From positions 186,001 to 250,000 of IMG/VR virus record IMGVR_UViG_3300033995_001164: a DNA stretch of 64,000 bases. One strand, 5' to 3'. Made by a program: the position numbers and the translations under genes. Every line of letters starts with the position of its first letter. Position 1 is the first letter of the stretch. The notes under the pieces are model-generated. The model saw only the letters and a list, made by a program, of their open reading frames with translations, did not search any database and was not told the DNA's origin. This document shows positions 2,751-55,428 of this stretch, piece by piece.

Positions 2751-3659
2751 ATGGAAACAAAATATTGTAAAAAATGTGATAATTTTATCCCTATCGGTGA
2801 ATTTCATCAATCACAAAATTCTTCATTGTGTAAATACCATCATAATGAGATTGGTAGAAATAATAAAAAAAAATATCGAAAAGACCCGAAAAACAAAGAA
2901 AAAGAGAGATTAAACTATCACGAAAGAAAAGTTAGACTATGGGCAAATTATCTCCTATCCTCAACCAAAAAAAGAAATTATGAAAATAATTTAACTGTTG
3001 AAGATATTTTAGAGATATATAACAAACAAGAGGGTAAATGTTATTGGTTTAAAATCCCTTTAATCCCTTCAACTATTAAAAAACACCCTCAAAAACCATC
3101 TTTAGATAGAATAGATGGGTTAAAAGGTTATACAAAAGAAAATGTTGTATTATCCTGTTATGCTGCTAATATCGGAAGAAATGAAACTTCAAGTGAAATT
3201 TGGTCTGATTTTTTAGAGGTCTTGTTTAATGGTGTTAATAAAACTGAAAAAAAGATAAATAACGAAGTAATTAAATTAAATAAAAAAATTGAGGAAACCG
3301 ATGACAGGGACGAGTTCGCAATTTATGATGAAAATTTAAATTGTACTGTAGTTAAAAATTTAAATCAATATGCTAGAGATAATAATATTAGCGTAAATAC
3401 TATACATTCAAGTCGGAAAAAAATAAATAGAGTTATTCAAAAAGGATTAATTATATTAAATCGAAGTAAAAAAGAGACCGTGGAAAAACGAATGTATCTA
3501 TTAACATCACCAAACGGTAATAAATACACGGTTCAATCATTACGAAAATTTTGTAATGAAAACAACCTTAATGATAGTGCATTACAAAAAGTGGGAAAAG
3601 GAGAAATTAAACATTATAAAGGTTGGGGATGTGAATATGTGACAAAAATTTTAATTTAA
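2751..3659 (+). CDS. Homing endonuclease (His-Me/HNH-like core, NUMOD-like C-terminal repeats)
   Basis: N-terminal CxxC; CYW...PSLDRID..KGYTKENVVLSC...N core; basic C-terminal DNA-binding repeats. Confidence 0.7.
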   Translation: METKYCKKCDNFIPIGEFHQSQNSSLCKYHHNEIGRNNKKKYRKDPKNKEKERLNYHERKVRLWANYLLSSTKKRNYENNLTVEDILEIYNKQEGKCYWFKIPLIPSTIKKHPQKPSLDRIDGLKGYTKENVVLSCYAANIGRNETSSEIWSDFLEVLFNGVNKTEKKINNEVIKLNKKIEETDDRDEFAIYDENLNCTVVKNLNQYARDNNISVNTIHSSRKKINRVIQKGLIILNRSKKETVEKRMYLLTSPNGNKYTVQSLRKFCNENNLNDSALQKVGKGEIKHYKGWGCEYVTKILI

Positions 3660-3718: not shown

Positions 3719-4117
3719 ATGAGGCATTTTTTTAGAAAAACGAGATTAAAAATTTACTTGAAATTTAGGGGGATTACCCGAATTAAAATGTCGTCTGTTG
3801 ATAAGAATGAGATAAAATCTTCTGCGATTTGTCGGCGTTTAATATCTCACCCGGATTCTAAATTTTTAATTGCTCCATTATCCCATAAAAGATATATTAA
3901 AAACGACCCATTAGGGATGTTTATTGTTTTATCAAACAATAGAATTAACATCACTAATCACATATATAACTATGATGTTAATTTAAGTCCAGCAATTTCC
4001 GATAAATTAAACGATATGTTTGATAATAAAGTTGAATTGTTAAGACAAACTTTTGAAACTGAAATTAAAAGTCAAATTAAGCATTCTCTTACCACAATAC
4101 TTGAAAAACTTATGTAG
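3719..4117 (+). CDS. Hypothetical protein
   Basis: 132-aa ORF with upstream TACCTTTG host-type promoter element. Confidence 0.6.
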   Translation: MRHFFRKTRLKIYLKFRGITRIKMSSVDKNEIKSSAICRRLISHPDSKFLIAPLSHKRYIKNDPLGMFIVLSNNRINITNHIYNYDVNLSPAISDKLNDMFDNKVELLRQTFETEIKSQIKHSLTTILEKLM

Positions 4118-4553
4118 ATAGTTGTTCTTTAATCACTTTTAAAATTAAACCTCTTAATGATTCATTTTGAGGTTTTTTTATTGGGGTTTTAATTAATCTT
4201 TTTTTAGTCCCATTCCACACCGATTCTGACTCTTTAATTGGATTACCACTTAAAGTGGGATTAACAGCGGAACCCTCTTCATCATTCTGACCTCGGTAAC
4301 TTTGTTTTTGTTTCATTAACAAATGAGACATTTTTTTAGTCTTAGACTCTATCTCTTTTCTTTTTTGGGGGGTTTCCTTATAATCTCCATCCGCCTCTTC
4401 ATAAGCCAATTCTGCATTTGTATAGTGGTAAACTTCATCAGTAAATGGGTCTAATTGTTTTTTTTCCCATATTTGAGGGGCTAAAACAATTGGTGTTTTA
4501 TAATTTCCGGAACTTCCGGAACCTGTTGCTTCATTTATTCTATTTTTTTTCAT
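4110..4553 (-). CDS. Hypothetical protein, probably virion-associated
   Basis: Likely start MKKNRINEA at 4553, with the TATTTATA motif about 10 nt upstream. Confidence 0.55.
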   Translation of the reverse strand: MKKNRINEATGSGSSGNYKTPIVLAPQIWEKKQLDPFTDEVYHYTNAELAYEEADGDYKETPQKRKEIESKTKKMSHLLMKQKQSYRGQNDEEGSAVNPTLSGNPIKESESVWNGTKKRLIKTPIKKPQNESLRGLILKVIKEQLST

Positions 4554-32101: not shown

Positions 32102-32511
32102 GGGGATGAAATGGAATTGACTGACATATCTACTTATTTAGGGCACGTAGTGAGAAGTTTCCTATCACTTAAATCTATGGATGACAAAATTATAAATGGC
32201 AACATTTTAAACAAAATGGCTCTAGTAGGTCTTGTACGTCAAGATGAGCTTGTGAACGTAGCGTAAGCAAACACACATTGGGGTCGACGGATATATGTAC
32301 CTTGCAACAGAAATATCTTAAGGTGTGATACCACCCGAAGAGTGTCAAGGTCTCGTTTGAGGGTCTACCTATTAAAGTGAACCTCCCACAGTTGTAGGTA
32401 ATGATGGAAAAATTAAAACCTTCTTATTTGTCAGTTGAGAATTAATTGAATAAACGTGTAGACCTAAACACTTAGGATGGACAACACCCGATTTCGAAAT
32501 CGGCATCTCCA
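32102..32511 (+). ncRNA. ssrA: tmRNA; tag reading frame 32198-32266 encodes (A)GNILNKMALVGLVRQDELVNVA
   Basis: 5' GGGGATG pairs with 3' CATCTCC-A including the G3.U70 pair; GGAATTGAC D-loop; GGAC...TTCGAA T-arm; resume context ATAAAT-GGC. No encoded CCA. Confidence 0.9.
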
Positions 32512-32520
32512 CTTTAATAA

Positions 32521-42173: not shown

Positions 42174-42277
42174 AATATTAAACATATGGTGGTCTATCAC
42201 CTCACATTTTCAACGGGTCCAATTTTATGTGTGCCTCACTGGTTTACTTCTGCAATGTCACTTTAATGTTTAATATT
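42174..42277 (-). ncRNA. Candidate structured RNA, 104 nt
   Basis: Perfect 12-bp closing helix AATATTAAACAT/ATGTTTAATATT; internal CACAT/ATGTG and GGTG/CACC helices. Confidence 0.45.
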
Positions 42278-43073
42278 ACTTATTTTGGACAATTTTTATC
42301 ATTTCCATAATCCCATAATTTTTACACCATTTTCTAACCGCATTATCACTAACATTATAATGACGACCAACGGATGTAAATGTCTTGTGTTTCTCAAAAA
42401 TTTCCAATAATTCAGGAACTTTTGGGATTATGTTATTTATTCTTTTTCCTTCATAATAACACTCAATAGAACAATATTTTTTACTTTTTCCAGTATATTC
42501 TCCGTTACAAGTTAAACATTGTTTAATTTCTTTTTCCTTTGGTGGTAATTTAACTAACTCGGCATTTGTTAAATTATTTAACCACTCTATGGATGGTTCT
42601 GATTTTTTTGTTTTTACATTTTTACCTCGATAATTATTAGTCATAGCGTGACAATTAGGGCATAATATTTGTAAATTATTTAATCTATTATCATTTGAAT
42701 CACCATTTATATGATGTAATTCTAATTTAATTGGTTGTTCCATCCATTGTGATAATCCACAACATTCACAGGTTTTAGTTTTTAACCCGTCTTCAATTAA
42801 TCGTTTTCTTAAATTATGACTCCCATAAACAGAACCTTTAATTAATATTTTATCCAAACTCATTGGTGGGATAACTTTTCTATATCTATCACCCTGATTC
42901 CAACCTTGTCCGGTAAAATGGGATGTATCAATATTAAATTCTGTAATTTTATTTCTGAGTGTTTTATAATTTCCACCAGCAGCAATAATCCCTAATTTTT
43001 TACAAACTTCAGATATTGACAACGATTCTTTAATAACTTGTTCTAAACTCTCTTTTGTGTGTTTATATTTCAT
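42276..43073 (-). CDS. HNH homing endonuclease
   Basis: CECCG...LELHHINGDSNDNRLNNLQILCPNCHAMT; HTH-like termini. Confidence 0.9.
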   Translation of the reverse strand: MKYKHTKESLEQVIKESLSISEVCKKLGIIAAGGNYKTLRNKITEFNIDTSHFTGQGWNQGDRYRKVIPPMSLDKILIKGSVYGSHNLRKRLIEDGLKTKTCECCGLSQWMEQPIKLELHHINGDSNDNRLNNLQILCPNCHAMTNNYRGKNVKTKKSEPSIEWLNNLTNAELVKLPPKEKEIKQCLTCNGEYTGKSKKYCSIECYYEGKRINNIIPKVPELLEIFEKHKTFTSVGRHYNVSDNAVRKWCKNYGIMEMIKIVQNK

Positions 43074-43235: not shown

Positions 43236-43240
43236 AGTTG

Positions 43241-43316
43241 TTGATAAGGTGGGTTTCGAACCCACGGACTCTCGGCAGTTACCCACCGAGTGTTTCGCCA
43301 ACAAAACTTCTTACCA
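43241..43316 (-). ncRNA. tRNA-like RNA 1 with GNRA hairpin in place of the anticodon loop
   Basis: TGGTAAG/CTTATCA-A acceptor, GTTT/AAAC D-stem, GTGGG-TTCGAAA-CCCAC T-arm; central CTCGGTGG-GTAA-CTGCCGAG. Confidence 0.7.
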
Positions 43317-46993: not shown

Positions 46994-47641
46994 TTATTTT
47001 AACCATTTTCTAATGGCGTTATCACTAACACCATATTTACGACCTGTTCCTTTATACCCAAGATTAATTACATCTTGTTTTATTTGTTCTATGGATGGTC
47101 TCTCAACTTTTCTATTTTGTTTATTTGTACATTTGATACATTTATCACTTTTTTTATCTTTTGTACCACCACACTCACAATGGTATTTAATTTTATTAGA
47201 TTTCCCGGAATATGTGCTAGTTTGGGAGTGACAATTAGGACATAAAAATCTTAAATTTTCTATTCTATTGTCATTATTAACCCCATTAATATGGTCTAAA
47301 TGTAGGCTAATATTTTTACCATTCCATTCCCCATTATTGCCACATTCGACACATTTATACTCAAGTAAATTTTTCTTTAATATTCTATTTTTAATTTTAC
47401 CTCTCGCAAATGTTGAATCTTTAACAAAAACGTCCTCGTCTAATCTAACTTCTTTAGGTCCTGTACCATAATAATTATATTTAGGAATCTCTAAACCCAA
47501 TTTAATAATTCTGTCTTTAATATTTCTATAACCACCCGACCCATTTGGTGATAAATTAAATAATAAAATAACCTCTCTCATTGATTTTGAATTATTTAAT
47601 ATTTCAAATAATTCTTCTTTTGTTACAGTTTTTAAATTCAT
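46994..47641 (-). CDS. HNH homing endonuclease
   Basis: CVECG...LHLDHINGVNNDNRIENLRFLCPNCHSQT; same C-terminal YGVSDNAIRKW as 42276..43073. Confidence 0.9.
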   Translation of the reverse strand: MNLKTVTKEELFEILNNSKSMREVILLFNLSPNGSGGYRNIKDRIIKLGLEIPKYNYYGTGPKEVRLDEDVFVKDSTFARGKIKNRILKKNLLEYKCVECGNNGEWNGKNISLHLDHINGVNNDNRIENLRFLCPNCHSQTSTYSGKSNKIKYHCECGGTKDKKSDKCIKCTNKQNRKVERPSIEQIKQDVINLGYKGTGRKYGVSDNAIRKWLK

Positions 47642-52484: not shown

Positions 52485-52687
52485 TATTCCTCACTTTTTT
52501 TAGGTCCCTTGAAATCACAATCAAGACAAACGTATCTCTGTTCTTCAATGCTCCAATCCATATTATAATGTTGACATTCCTTAGGTTTTAAATATTTTTG
52601 TTGTTTCTTGTATTCCGACACCACTTTAAGTGCTGTTTTATACTGACTTTCTGTTATCATAGTTAAAAGAATAAGTAGGGTCTCCAT
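52484..52687 (-). CDS. Small zinc-ribbon protein
   Basis: ECQH...YVCLDC. Confidence 0.45.
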   Translation of the reverse strand: METLLILLTMITESQYKTALKVVSEYKKQQKYLKPKECQHYNMDWSIEEQRYVCLDCDFKGPKKSEE

Positions 52688-53172
52688 TCATCAGGGATTT
52701 CGTGATGAACTTGTTTCATTAACATCAAGTAATGAGGTCTCCTTGGTTGAGGAATTTCCTTACCGTATTCCTCCAACGTCAAATTGGACTTCTCACCGTT
52801 ACACCTTCTACAAGCGGTAACTAAGTTGTCCCAACTGTCTTTCCCCCCCTTAGATTGGGGTATTACGTGGTCCAAAGTTAGCGTCTTTCTATTATTGTCT
52901 CCACAATATACACACTCAAAGTTATCTCTACGATAAACATTCTCTCTACTTAAAGGAACTTTTTGAATTATCTGATTCACATATTTGTAGACCCGAATAA
53001 TTGAAGGTTTTTTGATATCCAATTCAGGATTCACTAATTTGAATGATTCCGGATGTTCATTTATAACGTCAGCATTACCCTTATAAGAAATGACGAAAGC
53101 CCTCTCTGTGGAAATAATACTCCTCGCCATAAAACTTGAATCCAAAACCAAAGTTTTTTGGTAACTACTCAC
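52663..53172 (-). CDS. HNH endonuclease (McrA-like)
   Basis: RENVYRRDNFECVYCG...TLDHVIPQSKGGKDSWDNLVTACRRCNGEK. Confidence 0.9.
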   Translation of the reverse strand: MSSYQKTLVLDSSFMARSIISTERAFVISYKGNADVINEHPESFKLVNPELDIKKPSIIRVYKYVNQIIQKVPLSRENVYRRDNFECVYCGDNNRKTLTLDHVIPQSKGGKDSWDNLVTACRRCNGEKSNLTLEEYGKEIPQPRRPHYLMLMKQVHHEIPDEWRPYLFF

Positions 53173-53524: not shown

Positions 53525-53609
53525 TAGAGAATATGGGATTCGAACCCATACCCCCATTTAAGGAGGGACACATTAGCAGTGTGTTCTGATACCGTTACAG
53601 CAATTCTCT
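53525..53609 (-). tRNA. tRNA-Ser (GCT)
   Basis: ACACA-CTGCTAA-TGTGT; long variable arm. Confidence 0.9.
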
Positions 53610-54389
53610 TTTTGAATAATTAACAATAAATTCTGATTTACCTGTTTCAGTTATTTCTTCGTGTATTTCACAATGACAATTACTACAAACCAAAACACAT
53701 TTATCAACCTCTTTTTTCATTTTTTCTTCTGAATAATTTTTACCCCCTATAGTAAAATCTTTTTCATCAGGATTGATATGGTGAAATTGTAAGGCGTTCA
53801 TAGATTTACTATAACCACATCTCTGACAACAACCACCTTTATACTCAACTAATCTTTTTTTTCTATTTTTACGACATCTAACTACGTGTTCAACAGAACT
53901 TTTCCTACGTTCAATCGCGGTTTGAGTTTTGACCTCAACAATACTACTAATAATCTTTCTACCAACTCCTAATATTTCACTAACTTTTCGGATGCTACCA
54001 ATTTTGTCATATAATTCTTTTATTTTTTTTATAAAATCCTCATCTTTAAATCTTAATTCATTTTTATTTTTATTAAGATTAAAAATTTTACAAATTCTGA
54101 TTACTTTATCTTGACTAATATTAACTTGGGGAAAAATACTTTTATATGTTTCACCATTTTGTTTTAAATTAATAATTTTATCAATTACCGATTTGTCAAT
54201 TAGTTTTAAAAAATCTTCATCATTTATTGTTGTTGTTTTATAATTTTCGTGAACACCTCCCATACCATTTTTATTAATATGATATGAAATAACACCGACG
54301 CTACAACCCAATATATTTTTAATATTTGTAATACTATATCCTTCTAACCTCAATTTTAATATTGAATCTTTTAATTTTTCTGTTTCCAT
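53595..54389 (-). CDS. HNH-type homing endonuclease with multiple HTH-like segments
   Basis: GGCCQRCGY...LQFHHINPDEKDF...EVDKCVLVCSNCHCEIH; stop codon lies inside tRNA-Ser. Confidence 0.85.
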   Translation of the reverse strand: METEKLKDSILKLRLEGYSITNIKNILGCSVGVISYHINKNGMGGVHENYKTTTINDEDFLKLIDKSVIDKIINLKQNGETYKSIFPQVNISQDKVIRICKIFNLNKNKNELRFKDEDFIKKIKELYDKIGSIRKVSEILGVGRKIISSIVEVKTQTAIERRKSSVEHVVRCRKNRKKRLVEYKGGCCQRCGYSKSMNALQFHHINPDEKDFTIGGKNYSEEKMKKEVDKCVLVCSNCHCEIHEEITETGKSEFIVNYSKRELL

Positions 54390-54522: not shown

Positions 54523-54579
54523 AATTTGATGTCTTTCCATCAGTCATCCCTATTATTTGGTAAGGGTGGAACATCCTTG

Positions 54580-54722
54580 TGGTCAGGACAGGTCTCGAAC
54601 CTGTACGATTGAAAAGACCAATTTTACTCGGTTCTTCGGGATGGTCAACATATTTAATGTGATGTCTCACGGCCCGATTAATCAATCACCCATTACGCGT
54701 CTACCAATTCCGCCACCTGACC
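54580..54722 (-). ncRNA. tRNA-like RNA 5 (143 nt, Leu-type D-arm)
   Basis: GGTCAGG/CCTGACC-A; TGGCGGAATTGGTAGACGC; ACAGG-TTCGAGA-CCTGT; about 90-nt insert with no 7-nt anticodon loop. Confidence 0.75.
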
Positions 54723-54726
54723 AATT

Positions 54727-54825
54727 TGAGGTTGAGAATTCCTCTGTGTCATAGAGAACTTATACTCTAGTTTTTAGTACCCCTCATCTCACAACGGTTT
54801 GCGTACCGTATCGGGAATAACACAT
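54727..54825 (-). ncRNA. Pseudoknotted RNA motif, copy A
   Basis: Shares ends and an internal GTGAGAT with copy B; P1 TGTGTTA/TGACACA; 3' hairpin GAGG-AATTCTCAA-CCTC. Confidence 0.6.
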
Positions 54826-54829
54826 TTCG

Positions 54830-54967
54830 AATTAAAGGTAGGACTCGAACCTACGACCTGATTTCCTTTTCCACTTAGTTCGGTATTGGATGTGACTCCG
54901 TCCCTTATTCGTTGTTTTTCTCTTTCGAGTTAGGTATGTCTGTTCTAACCAACTGAACTACTTTAAT
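54830..54967 (-). ncRNA. tRNA-like RNA 6 (138 nt)
   Basis: ATTAAAG/CTTTAAT; TAGTTCAGTTGGTTAGAACA D-arm; AGGTC-GTAGG-TTCGAGT-CCTAC; about 80-nt purine-rich insert replaces the anticodon arm. Confidence 0.75.
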
Positions 54968-54969
54968 TT

Positions 54970-55072
54970 TGAGGTTGAGAACTCCTCGTGTTGTGCAAAT
55001 ATAGACATAAATCCTTTAAAATTTATAATCTCACCCGACTATTCCATTCCCCTCCCACCGGGAACAACACAT
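54970..55072 (-). ncRNA. Pseudoknotted RNA motif, copy B
   Basis: P1 GTGTTGT/ACAACAC; GTGAGAT; GAGG-AGTTCTCAA-CCTC. Confidence 0.6.
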
Positions 55073-55086
55073 TTACCATTACTGAT

Positions 55087-55208
55087 AGTATCTTTATGTA
55101 AATTAGAGATATTCTATTCCAGACTTACCTGGACTTCTGTATTATATTTCAGAAACTTTTAAGGTTTCACCTCTATCTGATTGTCCCAGATTAATTTACA
55201 AAGATACT
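55087..55208 (-). ncRNA. Candidate multibranch RNA, 122 nt
   Basis: About 17-bp closing helix plus four short hairpins (ATCTG/CAGAT, AGG/CCT, TTCTG/CAGAA, TCCAG/CTGGA). Confidence 0.5.
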
Positions 55209-55224
55209 TAATATTTACCAATTT

Positions 55225-55428
55225 TTATTTCCATTGAGTTTTTCGGTTATACTTCCAAGTTTTGTGTTCTCTATATTTGTGAGAGAACTGACCTTTTCTG
55301 TAATGAACACCCTCGTCCCAATATGGTGGGTATTCAAACTTTAACCAAATCAATCTATAATCTTTTGAACAAGTCGCCTTGTTCAATTTCATTCTGTTTG
55401 TGTTTACACTCATAATCTCTGAGTCCAT
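55225..55428 (-). CDS. Small basic hypothetical protein
   Basis: 67-aa ORF within the RNA operon. Confidence 0.5.
   Translation of the reverse strand: MDSEIMSVNTNRMKLNKATCSKDYRLIWLKFEYPPYWDEGVHYRKGQFSHKYREHKTWKYNRKTQWK

What the first reader, a model, noticed from the sequence alone, without database searches (positions are those of the whole stretch)
54727..55072. Two-copy pseudoknotted RNA with internal covariation
Two diverged copies of about 100 nt flank tRNA mimic 6. Conserved: the 5' ATGTGTT.TTCCCG, an internal GTGAGAT, and a 3' hairpin GAGG-A(A/G)TTCTCAA-CCTC. P1 shows compensatory change (A-T to G-C and T.G to T-A), and the invariant TGAGA can pair with the loop TCTCA to form a pseudoknot. 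The interiors differ completely. I do not recognise it as a known ribozyme or riboswitch; self-cleavage that frees neighbouring RNAs is one testable idea.
Basis: seen in the sequence. Interest (0 to 1): 0.75.

Follow-up and report, generated by a model that had tools for sequence, protein, structure and literature searches.

The report
Phage pseudoknotted RNA module beside tRNAs
The two ~100-nt repeats are real copies of a previously undescribed, phage-only structured RNA (a three-way junction locked by a loop-loop pairing) that sits as a spacer in front of tRNAs and also forms the core of an abundant, stable non-coding RNA of the crAss-like phage phi14:2; what it does is still unknown.

Summary
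Observation confirmed. Both copies lie on the minus (tRNA) strand of a 309-kb lake jumbo phage, 3-5 nt upstream of insert-bearing tRNA-like genes. No Rfam 15 family matches. Two exact-motif scans of IMG/VR plus a covariance model recovered more than 100 distinct homologues, 1-3 per complete phage genome and essentially none in cellular genomes.

The shared core is P1 (GUGUUG/CAACAC), P2 (a hairpin whose loop carries UGAGAA), a hypervariable P3, and a downstream UUCUCA that pairs with the P2 loop. Pairing is 92% against 40-59% for slid controls. Compensatory changes occur in P1, P2, P4 and the loop-loop pairing, with 31 G.U against 5 A.C.

There are two architectures. Type 1, as in this window, presents UUCUCA in a 3' hairpin (P4). 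In 54 of 76 distinct copies it abuts a tRNA, a tRNA-like gene or another copy. Type 2 embeds the same core in a 150-476-nt RNA. This includes the long intergenic region of Cellulophaga phage phi14:2, which was reported as highly transcribed, early and stable.

Window copy B also carries the type-2 5' domain, so it is about 255 nt long.

Best reading: a stable structured RNA module released from tRNA-array transcripts by tRNA end-processing. Self-cleavage is untested and has no support here. Function is unknown.

The parts
55073..55222 (-). 5' extension of copy B. It is homologous to the 5' domain of the large (type-2) RNA: a degenerate H1, the long hairpin H2 (UUUGUAAAU...AUUUACAUAAAG), the AUAC linker and hairpin H3 (CUAUC-AGUAAU-GGUA).
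   Evidence: Alignment with L017, L050, L110, L097, L083 and L066. The block of ~30 nt just 5' of the core is invariant.
54968..55072 (-). Copy B core (type 1). P1 is 55070-55065 with 54993-54988. P2 is 55064-55060 with 55051-55047, loop 55059-55052. Variable P3 is 55046-54994. P4 is 54987-54984 with 54974-54971, loop 54983-54975. A 3-nt AAA spacer follows.
   Evidence: Model R1 scores 81 bits, E 3.8e-14. The MFE fold recovers P1, P2, P3 and P4.
55053..55057 (-). Copy B, P2-loop strand of the loop-loop pairing (UGGGA). It pairs with UCUCA at 54980-54976 through one G.U. A second candidate, UGAGA, lies in P3 at 55033-55029.
   Evidence: Positional homology with the family P2 loop.
54976..54980 (-). 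Copy B, P4-loop strand of the loop-loop pairing (UCUCA).
54830..54967 (-). Insert-bearing tRNA between the two copies: tRNA-Leu(UAA)-like with 50 extra nt at position 37/38.
   Evidence: Rfam tRNA, 43 bits. ARAGORN in intron mode.
54723..54825 (-). Copy A (type 1, variant with an expanded P2 loop). P1 is 54823-54818 with 54751-54746. P2 is 54816-54813 with 54783-54780. An inserted hairpin lies at 54809-54794 inside the P2 loop. P3 is 54779-54753. The linker A is 54745. P4 is 54744-54741 with 54731-54728, loop 54740-54732. A 5-nt AAAUU spacer follows.
   Evidence: Model R1 scores 50 bits, E 1.4e-7. The same variant occurs in L005, L007 and L018.
54787..54791 (-). Copy A, UGAGA in the P2 loop. 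It pairs with UCUCA at 54737-54733.
   Evidence: The sister copy L005:259-361 carries UAAGA with UCUUA (compensatory).
54733..54737 (-). Copy A, P4-loop strand of the loop-loop pairing (UCUCA).
54578..54722 (-). tRNA-like gene directly downstream of copy A. Its acceptor, D and T arms are of the conserved 'GTCAGG...CCTGAC' type, with a ~95-nt non-canonical centre.
   Evidence: Sequence. 25 homologous contexts. A 127-nt metatranscriptome contig of depth 171 covers 54595-54721 and ends at the predicted 5' end.

Best explanation
The repeats are two members of a phage-specific family of structured non-coding RNAs.

Shown:
- The conserved core is a three-way junction. P1 closes it, P2 carries a UGAGAA loop, and P3 is a free-length variable arm.
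- A downstream UUCUCA pairs with the P2 loop.
- In the tRNA-linked form (type 1, both window copies), UUCUCA sits in the loop of a short 3' hairpin (P4). That hairpin ends 3-7 nt before the first base of a tRNA or tRNA-like gene. The 5' end often starts 3-5 nt after the previous tRNA.
- The same core is the centre of a free-standing 150-476-nt RNA (type 2).

Inferred:
- The element is transcribed as part of the polycistronic tRNA-array RNA.
- It is cut out by the ordinary tRNA end-processing enzymes: RNase P at its 3' side and RNase Z or RNase E plus exonucleases at its 5' side.
- It then persists as a compact, stable RNA that acts in trans, most probably as a specific binding platform for a protein or another RNA.
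- It is neither a self-cleaver nor a mere leader.
- The phi14:2 long intergenic transcript, reported as early, abundant and unusually stable, is the type-2 member of this family.

The partner and the benefit to the phage are unknown.
For: Family and structure:
- 33 and more than 120 IMG/VR loci were found from two independent exact motifs. The model gave 39 + 81 matches.
- 92.2% of cells pair, against 40-59% when partners are slid. The covariation score is 0.070 against a shuffled 0.054 (0 of 500 shuffles reach it), with 5 pairs changed on both sides.
- P4 switches from GAGG/CCUC to AAUG/CAUU (L101, L116) and to AAGG/CCUU (L063).
- P2 is replaced by AGUAAG/CUUACU in L020 and by UCAC/GUGG in phi14:2 while the loop is kept.
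- The core helices hold 31 G.U against 5 A.C, which places the structure on the tRNA strand.

Context:
- Of 76 distinct type-1 copies, 35 are followed by an ARAGORN-called tRNA at 1-7 nt (mode 5). At least 13 are followed by the GTCAGG-type tRNA-like gene, and 6 by another copy.
- 11 follow a tRNA 3' end within 8 nt.

Autonomy of the module:
- L101 is a lone copy followed by a hairpin plus U-run.
- Type-2 RNAs have no adjacent tRNA.
- There are 1-3 copies per complete genome.

Expression:
- Metatranscriptome contigs cover the element and its neighbours.
- The phi14:2 type-2 RNA (KC821624 about 2914-3360) lies in a 685-bp gap between rightward genes.
- Drobysheva et al. (bioRxiv 10.1101/2020.03.07.982082) report two long intergenic regions at that end of the genome. 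They are transcribed rightward, more strongly than most genes, early and without later decline, with function undetermined.
Against: - No experiment or read-level data shows the processed ends of the element or that it accumulates. The RNA data available were assembled contigs from related phages.
- Mapping the phi14:2 'g004-g005' region onto the type-2 RNA rests on gene order, because the paper's coordinate table was not available.
- The fixed short spacing to the tRNA 5' end would equally fit a cis-acting leader.
- Covariation is limited because the sequence is very conserved. Part of the set was also ascertained with exact motifs that fix either P4 or P1/P2.
- No partner has been identified.
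Confidence: 0.5

Rival explanations
1. Cis-acting pre-tRNA leader or spacer. The folded module insulates neighbouring tRNAs during co-transcriptional folding. It may also present the short AAAUU linker to RNase P, or block exonucleases, so that phage tRNAs mature efficiently. On this reading it has no function after excision.
For: The distance from the P4 end to tRNA +1 is constant (4-6 nt in 32 of 35 called cases). The A-rich linker ends in U. The element is frequently sandwiched between two tRNAs.
Against: The same core exists in free-standing type-2 RNAs and in lone or tandem type-1 copies with no tRNA behind them. A pure spacer would not need near-invariant helix sequences and a conserved loop-loop pairing across very different phages. 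Most tRNAs in the same arrays lack it.
Confidence: 0.2
2. Self-cleaving ribozyme. The module cuts at one of its borders and thereby frees the flanking tRNAs, as theta (minimal HDV-like) ribozymes are proposed to do for tRNA 3' trailers.
For: It sits within a few nt of tRNA ends, as theta ribozymes do (bioRxiv 10.1101/2023.06.13.544163). It has a pseudoknotted fold. The large type-2 form has many conserved unpaired nucleotides.
Against: No match to any ribozyme family in Rfam 15, even at E up to 10. In type 1, nearly all conserved positions are base-paired, and the junction nucleotides are few and variable. The topology is not the nested double pseudoknot of HDV-like ribozymes. RNA-library contigs run uninterrupted across both borders, though this is weak evidence because contigs cannot show absence. 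The type-2 RNA of phi14:2 is reported as a long, stable transcript.
Confidence: 0.12
3. DNA-level element: inverted-repeat ends of a small mobile or recombination element, or a protein-binding or promoter site in the array, with no RNA structure.
For: Conserved ends with a variable interior. HNH homing endonuclease genes are interspersed in the array. The 5' domain of copy B looks like an insertion relative to close relatives.
Against: Variation in the helices is strand-specific: 31 G.U against 5 A.C, and 14 against 0 in P1. There are compensatory changes in four helices. There are only 1-3 copies per genome, always on the tRNA strand. Promoter-like matches are at chance level.
Confidence: 0.04

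Closest known systems
Stable small RNAs encoded inside phage tRNA clusters (phage T4 species 1 and species 2 RNAs, rnaC and rnaD; from my own knowledge)
   Same: Non-tRNA structured RNAs co-transcribed with phage tRNAs and presumably released by the tRNA-processing machinery. Their function is unknown.
   Different: No sequence similarity was found in the GenBank phage collection, which should contain T4. Here the fold is a defined three-way junction plus loop-loop pairing, shared by more than 100 uncultured phages and one crAss-like isolate.
GOLLD and ROOL large ornate RNAs (Rfam families; cryo-EM in bioRxiv 10.1101/2024.12.08.627333)
   Same: Phage or prophage-borne, often next to tRNA genes, with variable expansions around a conserved core. 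Kissing loops are important. Function is unknown.
   Different: No Rfam match. This family is much smaller (about 80-130 nt for type 1, 150-476 nt for type 2). Oligomerisation is only a hypothesis here.
Theta (minimal HDV-like) ribozymes next to phage tRNAs (bioRxiv 10.1101/2023.06.13.544163)
   Same: Small structured RNA within about 5 nt of phage tRNA ends, and pseudoknotted.
   Different: Theta ribozymes have the nested double pseudoknot and catalytic C of HDV-like ribozymes and lie 3' of the tRNA they process. This element has a different topology, is anchored to the 5' end of the following tRNA, and shows no detected ribozyme signature.
   Same: A three-way-junction RNA carrying two mutually complementary loops.
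   Different: No sequence relation and no link to a packaging motor. Intermolecular pairing is untested here, and the type-2 form can make the same pairing within one molecule.
Flavivirus exoribonuclease-resistant RNAs (xrRNA; from my own knowledge)
   Same: A three-way junction whose hairpin loop pairs with a single-stranded stretch just 3' of P1, followed by another hairpin. This matches the type-2 layout.
   Different: Here the first arm (P2), not the last arm, makes the long-range pairing. There is no evidence of a 5'-end-threaded ring or of nuclease resistance. The setting is bacterial and phage.
Long non-coding RNAs of Cellulophaga phage phi14:2 (Drobysheva et al., bioRxiv 10.1101/2020.03.07.982082)
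   Same: The type-2 member lies in a long intergenic region at the left end of phi14:2. This most likely is one of the two reported abundant, early, stable transcripts.
   Different: That paper reports transcription only, without structure, family or function. The tRNA-linked type-1 form of this window was not described.

Membership tests
Any Rfam 15 family (including hammerhead, HDV-like, twister, twister-sister, pistol, hatchet, hairpin, GOLLD, ROOL, HEARO, RNase P, T-box, 6S) | Covariance-model match at or near the family's gathering score | tested here: not met
   There was no hit over either copy at gathering score or at E up to 10. There was none over type-2 RNAs in L050 or phi14:2 or in 14 other loci.
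tRNA | Cloverleaf with D, anticodon and T arms enclosed by the acceptor stem | tested here: not met
   ARAGORN and the Rfam tRNA model call the neighbours but not the element. The 3' hairpin lies outside P1, and its loop (NUUCUCA) lacks the T-loop consensus.
HDV-like / theta ribozymes | Nested double pseudoknot (P1, P1.1, P2, P3, with or without P4), with cleavage at the 5' end of P1 and a catalytic C in J4/2 | tested here: not met
   The segment after the P1 5' strand forms a local hairpin (P2) instead of pairing with the 3' end. There is no Rfam HDV match.
HDV-like / theta ribozymes | Site-specific self-scission in vitro | not testable with these tools
   This needs a transcription and cleavage assay.
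New family defined here (model R1) | P1 GUGUUG/CAACAC, a P2 hairpin with a UGAGA(A) loop, a variable P3, and a downstream UUCUCA complementary to the P2 loop | tested here: met
   Copy B scores 81 bits and copy A 50 bits. All four features are present at the coordinates given under parts.
Type-2 large RNA (phi14:2-type) | 5' domain (H1 loop AAACAUUGA, H2, AUAC, H3) plus core, plus 3' domain (H5, H6 ACCCU.../...AGGGU, GCUAA tail) | tested here: inconclusive
   Copy B has the 5' domain (H1 degenerate) and the core, but its 3' domain is replaced by P4 plus a tRNA. Copy A has the core only. Neither is a full member. No full type-2 RNA was found in this genome.
   Complementary loops are present and co-vary within the same element (L005:259-361). 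Whether they pair in cis or in trans cannot be decided here.
UG27 reverse-transcriptase ncRNA arrays (bioRxiv 10.64898/2026.09.22.753630) | Array of ~150-nt units beside a reverse transcriptase and two accessory genes | tested here: not met
   The neighbouring ORFs are HNH endonucleases, an ABC-membrane-like protein and a DUF6878 protein. No reverse transcriptase was found. There are only 1-3 copies per genome.

The most novel reading that the evidence does not exclude
In the tRNA-linked (type-1) form the two complementary 7-9-nt loops cannot reach each other within one molecule if P1, P2 and P4 are all formed. By ideal A-form geometry, the P2 / loop-loop / P4 stack is about 16 bp long, while its two ends are tethered to the two ends of the 6-8-bp P1.

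It would form closed dimers with two equal 23-bp rods (P1+P4+kiss+P2), or rings. On this reading it would be a self-assembling RNA scaffold. It could bundle pre-tRNAs or, after excision, build an RNA-only particle akin to ROOL and GOLLD. The type-2 RNA, with a 7-nt single-stranded linker, would make the same pairing in cis.
Probability: 0.2. Interest if true: 0.85.

Novelty: new variant of a known kind. Interest (0 to 1): 0.66.

Why it matters
Phage tRNA arrays are usually annotated as tRNAs plus junk spacers. Here a spacer turns out to be a conserved, covarying RNA fold. It is shared by more than 100 uncultured phages of very different genome sizes (4-362-kb contigs) and by a cultured crAss-like phage.

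In that cultured phage, the larger version lies in the genome region whose long intergenic transcripts were reported as highly abundant and persistent (the exact mapping is inferred from gene order). That gives an orphan, highly expressed crAss-like phage lncRNA a defined conserved core, a covariance model and a tractable host-phage pair (Cellulophaga baltica / phi14:2) for genetics.

It also adds a new family to the small set of ornate phage RNAs linked to tRNA genes (GOLLD, ROOL, theta ribozymes, T4 species 1/2). If the loops pair between molecules, it would be a natural self-assembling RNA module.

Tried and rejected
- **Rfam.** Gathering and permissive scans of the window, of 14 related loci, of L050 and of phi14:2 found nothing over the element.
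- **BLAST of the window element plus 5' domain against 50,697 GenBank phages.** No match. With a type-2 query, only phi14:2 matched.
- **Genome scan of 185,579 prokaryote species with the 5' motif.** There were 114 exact hits, which is consistent with the number expected by chance. Of the 80 loci returned, only 6 are real by the model, all on MAG contigs that look like mis-binned phage. The family is therefore not a cellular RNA.
- **Protein partner by synteny.** The 62-aa basic ORF that ends 1-170 nt upstream has no Pfam or PHROG hit. It is confined to the window's own clade, so I rejected it as a general partner.
- **Coding reading of the conserved AUG at the 5' end.** Rejected because the AUG is not conserved (UUG, AAG, ACG and CCG also occur) and interior lengths vary freely.
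- **Promoter and terminator scan.** At chance level.
- **Thermodynamic significance.** z-scores are only -0.7 to -1.4.
- **Alternative P2 with a GAGA tetraloop (CCUU-GAGA-AAGG).** This is possible only in one sequence variant and is not conserved.
- **RNA-seq.** Only assembled metatranscriptome contigs of related phages were available, with no read-level ends.
- **Relation to UG27 RT ncRNA arrays.** Rejected, since there is no RT nearby.
- **Literature search by literal motif.** Found nothing relevant.
- **Classifying the phage with a 354-aa ORF against GenBank phages.** No match.

Full report
**Where it is.**
The window is bases 186001-250000 of a 309,177-bp IMG/VR virus record that CheckV rates complete. 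DNA runs holding it are lake-water metagenomes. The region is a dense minus-strand array of tRNA genes: 23 by ARAGORN, 24 by Rfam, plus a tmRNA elsewhere in the window. HNH endonuclease ORFs are interspersed in it.

The finding lies on that same minus strand. Copy B is 55072..54968. It is followed after 3 nt by a 138-nt tRNA-Leu(UAA)-like gene that carries 50 extra nt at position 37/38 (54967..54830). Copy A is 54825..54723. It starts 4 nt after that tRNA and is followed after 5 nt by a tRNA-like gene with a ~95-nt non-canonical centre (54722..54578).

**Checking the observation.**
The two copies align with conserved 5' and 3' blocks and unrelated interiors. The 3' hairpin motif occurs exactly twice in the window and in the whole genome, against 0.17 expected in the window.

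Two details need correction:
- The 'invariant GTGAGAT' is at non-homologous positions in the two copies. It is in the P2 loop in copy A and in the variable arm in copy B. Copy B's true P2 loop reads UGGGA and can still pair with UCUCA through one G.U.
- Copy B extends about 150 nt further upstream.

Single-sequence folding recovers P1, P3 and P4, but the energies are not exceptional. Neither copy matches any Rfam 15 family, even at E up to 10.

**The family.**
An exact scan of IMG/VR for the 3' hairpin gave 33 loci. About 28 of them carry the 5' motif at the right distance.

A covariance model built from 25 distinct seeds (R1) scored 39 and 81 matches in these loci. In total there are more than 100 distinct sequences. 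Complete genomes hold 1-3 copies.

In one genome per prokaryotic species, the 5' motif gave 114 exact hits, no more than expected by chance. Of the 80 loci returned, only 6 are true matches, all on metagenome-bin contigs. The family is therefore essentially confined to phages.

**The fold.**
The core has four parts:
- P1 is GUGUUG/CAACAC, often extended by one pair.
- P2 is a 4-5-bp hairpin whose 7-9-nt loop contains UGAGA(A).
- P3 is an arm of free sequence and length.
- After the P1 3' strand comes a UUCUCA complementary to the P2 loop.

On 68 distinct model-aligned sequences, 92.2% of cells pair, against 40-59% when partners are slid by 1-3 columns. The covariation score exceeds all 500 column shuffles. 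Five pairs show changes on both sides.

Specific compensations are as follows:
- P1 pair 6 occurs as G-C, A-U, C-G and G.U.
- The fifth P2 pair occurs as C-G or U-A.
- P2 is wholly replaced, with its loop kept, in L020 (AGUAAG/CUUACU) and in phi14:2 (UCAC/GUGG).
- P4 GAGG/CCUC is replaced by AAUG/CAUU (L101, L116) and by AAGG/CCUU (L063).
- The loop-loop pairing pairs in 95% of cells, mostly unchanged or with G.U. One copy (L005:259-361) has UAAGA with UCUUA. Its tandem neighbour has UGAGA with UCUCA, so each loop matches the partner in its own element.

The core helices hold 31 G.U against 5 A.C, and 14 against 0 in P1. This places the structure in RNA read from the tRNA strand and argues against a DNA-level inverted repeat.

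One caveat applies. Conservation is so high, and ascertainment by exact motifs so direct, that the covariation evidence is real but modest in amount.

**Two architectures.**

*Type 1* includes both window copies. UUCUCA sits in the loop of a short hairpin, P4, which ends in an A-rich 3-7-nt linker. Of 76 distinct type-1 copies:
- 35 are followed by an ARAGORN-called tRNA of many identities, at 1-7 nt (mode 5);
- at least 13 are followed by a 'GTCAGG...CCTGAC' tRNA-like gene;
- 6 are followed by another copy;
- 11 follow a tRNA 3' end within 8 nt.

*Type 2* has the same P1-P3 core followed by AAAUGAG-UUCUCA-GCAAGUA, without a P4 hairpin. It is embedded in a larger RNA of 150-476 nt with these parts:
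- a 5' hairpin H1 with the invariant loop AAACAUUGA;
- a long variable hairpin H2;
- a conserved AUAC linker;
- hairpin H3, in which five of six pairs covary;
- variable hairpin H5;
- hairpin H6;
- a GCUAA tail.

L101 and L116 are intermediates in which the type-2 linker AAAUG has acquired a complementary CAUU.

Window copy B is a hybrid with the type-2 5' domain, the core, and then P4 plus a tRNA. Copy A is a bare core with a 16-nt hairpin inserted in the P2 loop. That variant is also seen in L005, L007 and L018.

**Link to a cultured phage.**
The only GenBank phage found with the family is Cellulophaga phage phi14:2, a crAss-like phage of the Steigviridae. Its type-2 RNA (record about 2914-3360) fills most of a 685-bp gap between rightward genes. 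The only annotations there are three 34-39-codon (105-120-nt) ORFs on the opposite strand.

Drobysheva et al. reported two long intergenic regions at this end of the genome. They are transcribed rightward, more strongly than most genes, are present from the earliest time point, and do not decline later. Their functions were 'to be determined'. By gene order, the first region is the type-2 RNA. The second contains a tmRNA-like gene scoring 46 bits against a cut-off of 47. I could not see the paper's coordinate table, so this mapping is an inference.

In freshwater, estuarine and marine metatranscriptome assemblies, contigs from related phages cover the element together with its neighbours. The invariant block just 5' of the core reaches the highest summed depth of the stretch in three of the four runs laid. 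A 127-nt contig of depth 171 ends at the predicted 5' end of the downstream tRNA-like RNA. These are contigs, not reads, so they show presence and not processing.

**How it most likely works.**

Shown:
- The fold.
- The phage restriction.
- The fixed placement between tRNA genes.
- The existence of the same core in free-standing RNAs.

Inferred:
- The element is made as part of the tRNA-array transcript.
- It is released by RNase P, which cuts at the 5' end of the following tRNA, and by the 3'-end machinery of the preceding tRNA.
- It then acts as a stable structured RNA.

The near-invariance of helix sequences suggests sequence-specific recognition by a protein or RNA partner rather than structure alone. 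This is clearest in the P1 5' strand, whose partner strand drifts through wobble-compatible changes. I give this reading 0.5.

The main rival is a purely cis-acting leader or insulator for tRNA maturation (0.2). It explains the spacing but not the free-standing forms.

Self-cleavage (0.12) remains possible, especially for the large form, which has many conserved unpaired nucleotides. However, nothing here supports it. There is no similarity to known ribozyme classes, and there is no conserved unpaired core in type 1.

A DNA-level element is unlikely (0.04).

**A geometric point (inference, not computed).**
The loop-loop helix should stack on both P2 and P4, giving a stack of about 16 bp. In type 1, the two ends of that stack are attached with 0-1 nt linkers to the two ends of the 6-8-bp P1. 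They cannot span it if all helices are regular.

Type 2 avoids the problem with a 7-nt single-stranded linker.

Type 1 may therefore pair loop-to-loop between molecules. A reciprocal dimer would give two equal rods of P1+P4+kiss+P2, about 23 bp each. Alternatively, type 1 may alternate between conformations. This is the most novel reading not excluded by the evidence, and native gels with loop-swap mutants can test it directly.

**Comparison with known systems.**
The element works most like the stable non-tRNA RNAs of phage tRNA clusters (T4 species 1 and 2) and like GOLLD and ROOL, which are ornate phage RNAs beside tRNAs of unknown function. It is a member of none of them by sequence or model. 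It shares a neighbourhood with theta ribozymes but not their fold. It shares a design principle, a three-way junction plus two complementary loops, with phi29 pRNA, and a layout with xrRNAs. These last three comparisons are resemblances recalled from knowledge, not tests.

**Verdict.**
This is a real, previously undescribed structured RNA family. It is not in Rfam 15, and the searched literature contains no description beyond the phi14:2 transcription note. I rate it as a new family within the known kind 'tRNA-linked structured phage ncRNAs of unknown function'. Its interest is moderately high because it is widespread, highly expressed in a culturable model, and structurally well defined.

Noticed in passing
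window 54578-54722 (-); also L003, L006, L007, L009, L011, L012, L025, L046, L067-L069, L088, L091 and others: A family of tRNA-like genes with near-invariant acceptor (A/GGTCAGG...CCTGACT/C), D arm (GCGGAAUGGUAGACGC) and T arm. The anticodon and variable region is replaced by a hypervariable 40-130-nt segment. ARAGORN either misses them or calls them with arbitrary 'introns' and identities.
   Followed up: partly
window 54830-54967 (-): A tRNA-Leu(UAA)-like gene with a 50-nt insertion at the canonical 37/38 position. This is far too short for a group I intron. Several related phages have tRNAs of 99-110 nt (L050, L097, L116).
   Followed up: partly
window 55225-55413 (-): A 62-aa lysine/arginine/tryptophan-rich ORF with no Pfam or PHROG match. 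In close relatives its stop codon directly abuts the element. It is conserved at 95-100% only within this phage clade.
   Followed up: yes
L154:3356-3827 (KC821624 about 4031-4502); L074:2254-2658; window 32102-32514 (+): Phage-encoded tmRNA genes. In phi14:2 the tmRNA-like gene (46 bits, just under Rfam's cut-off of 47) fills the second long intergenic region. In L074 a tmRNA starts about 90 nt after the type-2 RNA.
   Followed up: partly
window 53595-54389, 52663-53172, 46994-47641, 42276-43073 (all -): Four HNH endonuclease-type ORFs, some with HTH domains, are interspersed among the tRNA genes. This suggests homing-endonuclease traffic in the array.
   Followed up: partly
window 43240-43316 (-): ARAGORN calls a tRNA with a four-base anticodon (GUAA) next to tRNA-Leu(UAA).
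   Followed up: no
window 54523-54577 (-): The 55-nt spacer between the tRNA-like gene and tRNA-Arg(ACG) ends in the same AAAUU linker as the element and can close a GAUGU/ACAUC stem. It does not match model R1.
   Followed up: no
L044, L086, L098, L057, L018 (directly 3' of the type-1 element): A conserved block, AUUAGUGAACUUCGGUACCCAUACCGCUGACGAUGGGCUA, follows the element in place of a tRNA. It may be another unannotated structured RNA.
   Followed up: no
L009, L084, L099, L105, L041, L091, L053 (5' flank of type-1 copies): A conserved flank, CUAUCAACAA(C/U)A, lies directly before UUGUGUUG. It resembles the 5' strand of hairpin H3. It could also pair with the P1 5' strand as an alternative hairpin.
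   Followed up: no
L050:4100-4130; L074 about 2020-2040: T-arm-like hairpins (for example ACAGG-UUUGAAU-CCUGU) occur inside the variable expansions of type-2 RNAs.
   Followed up: no
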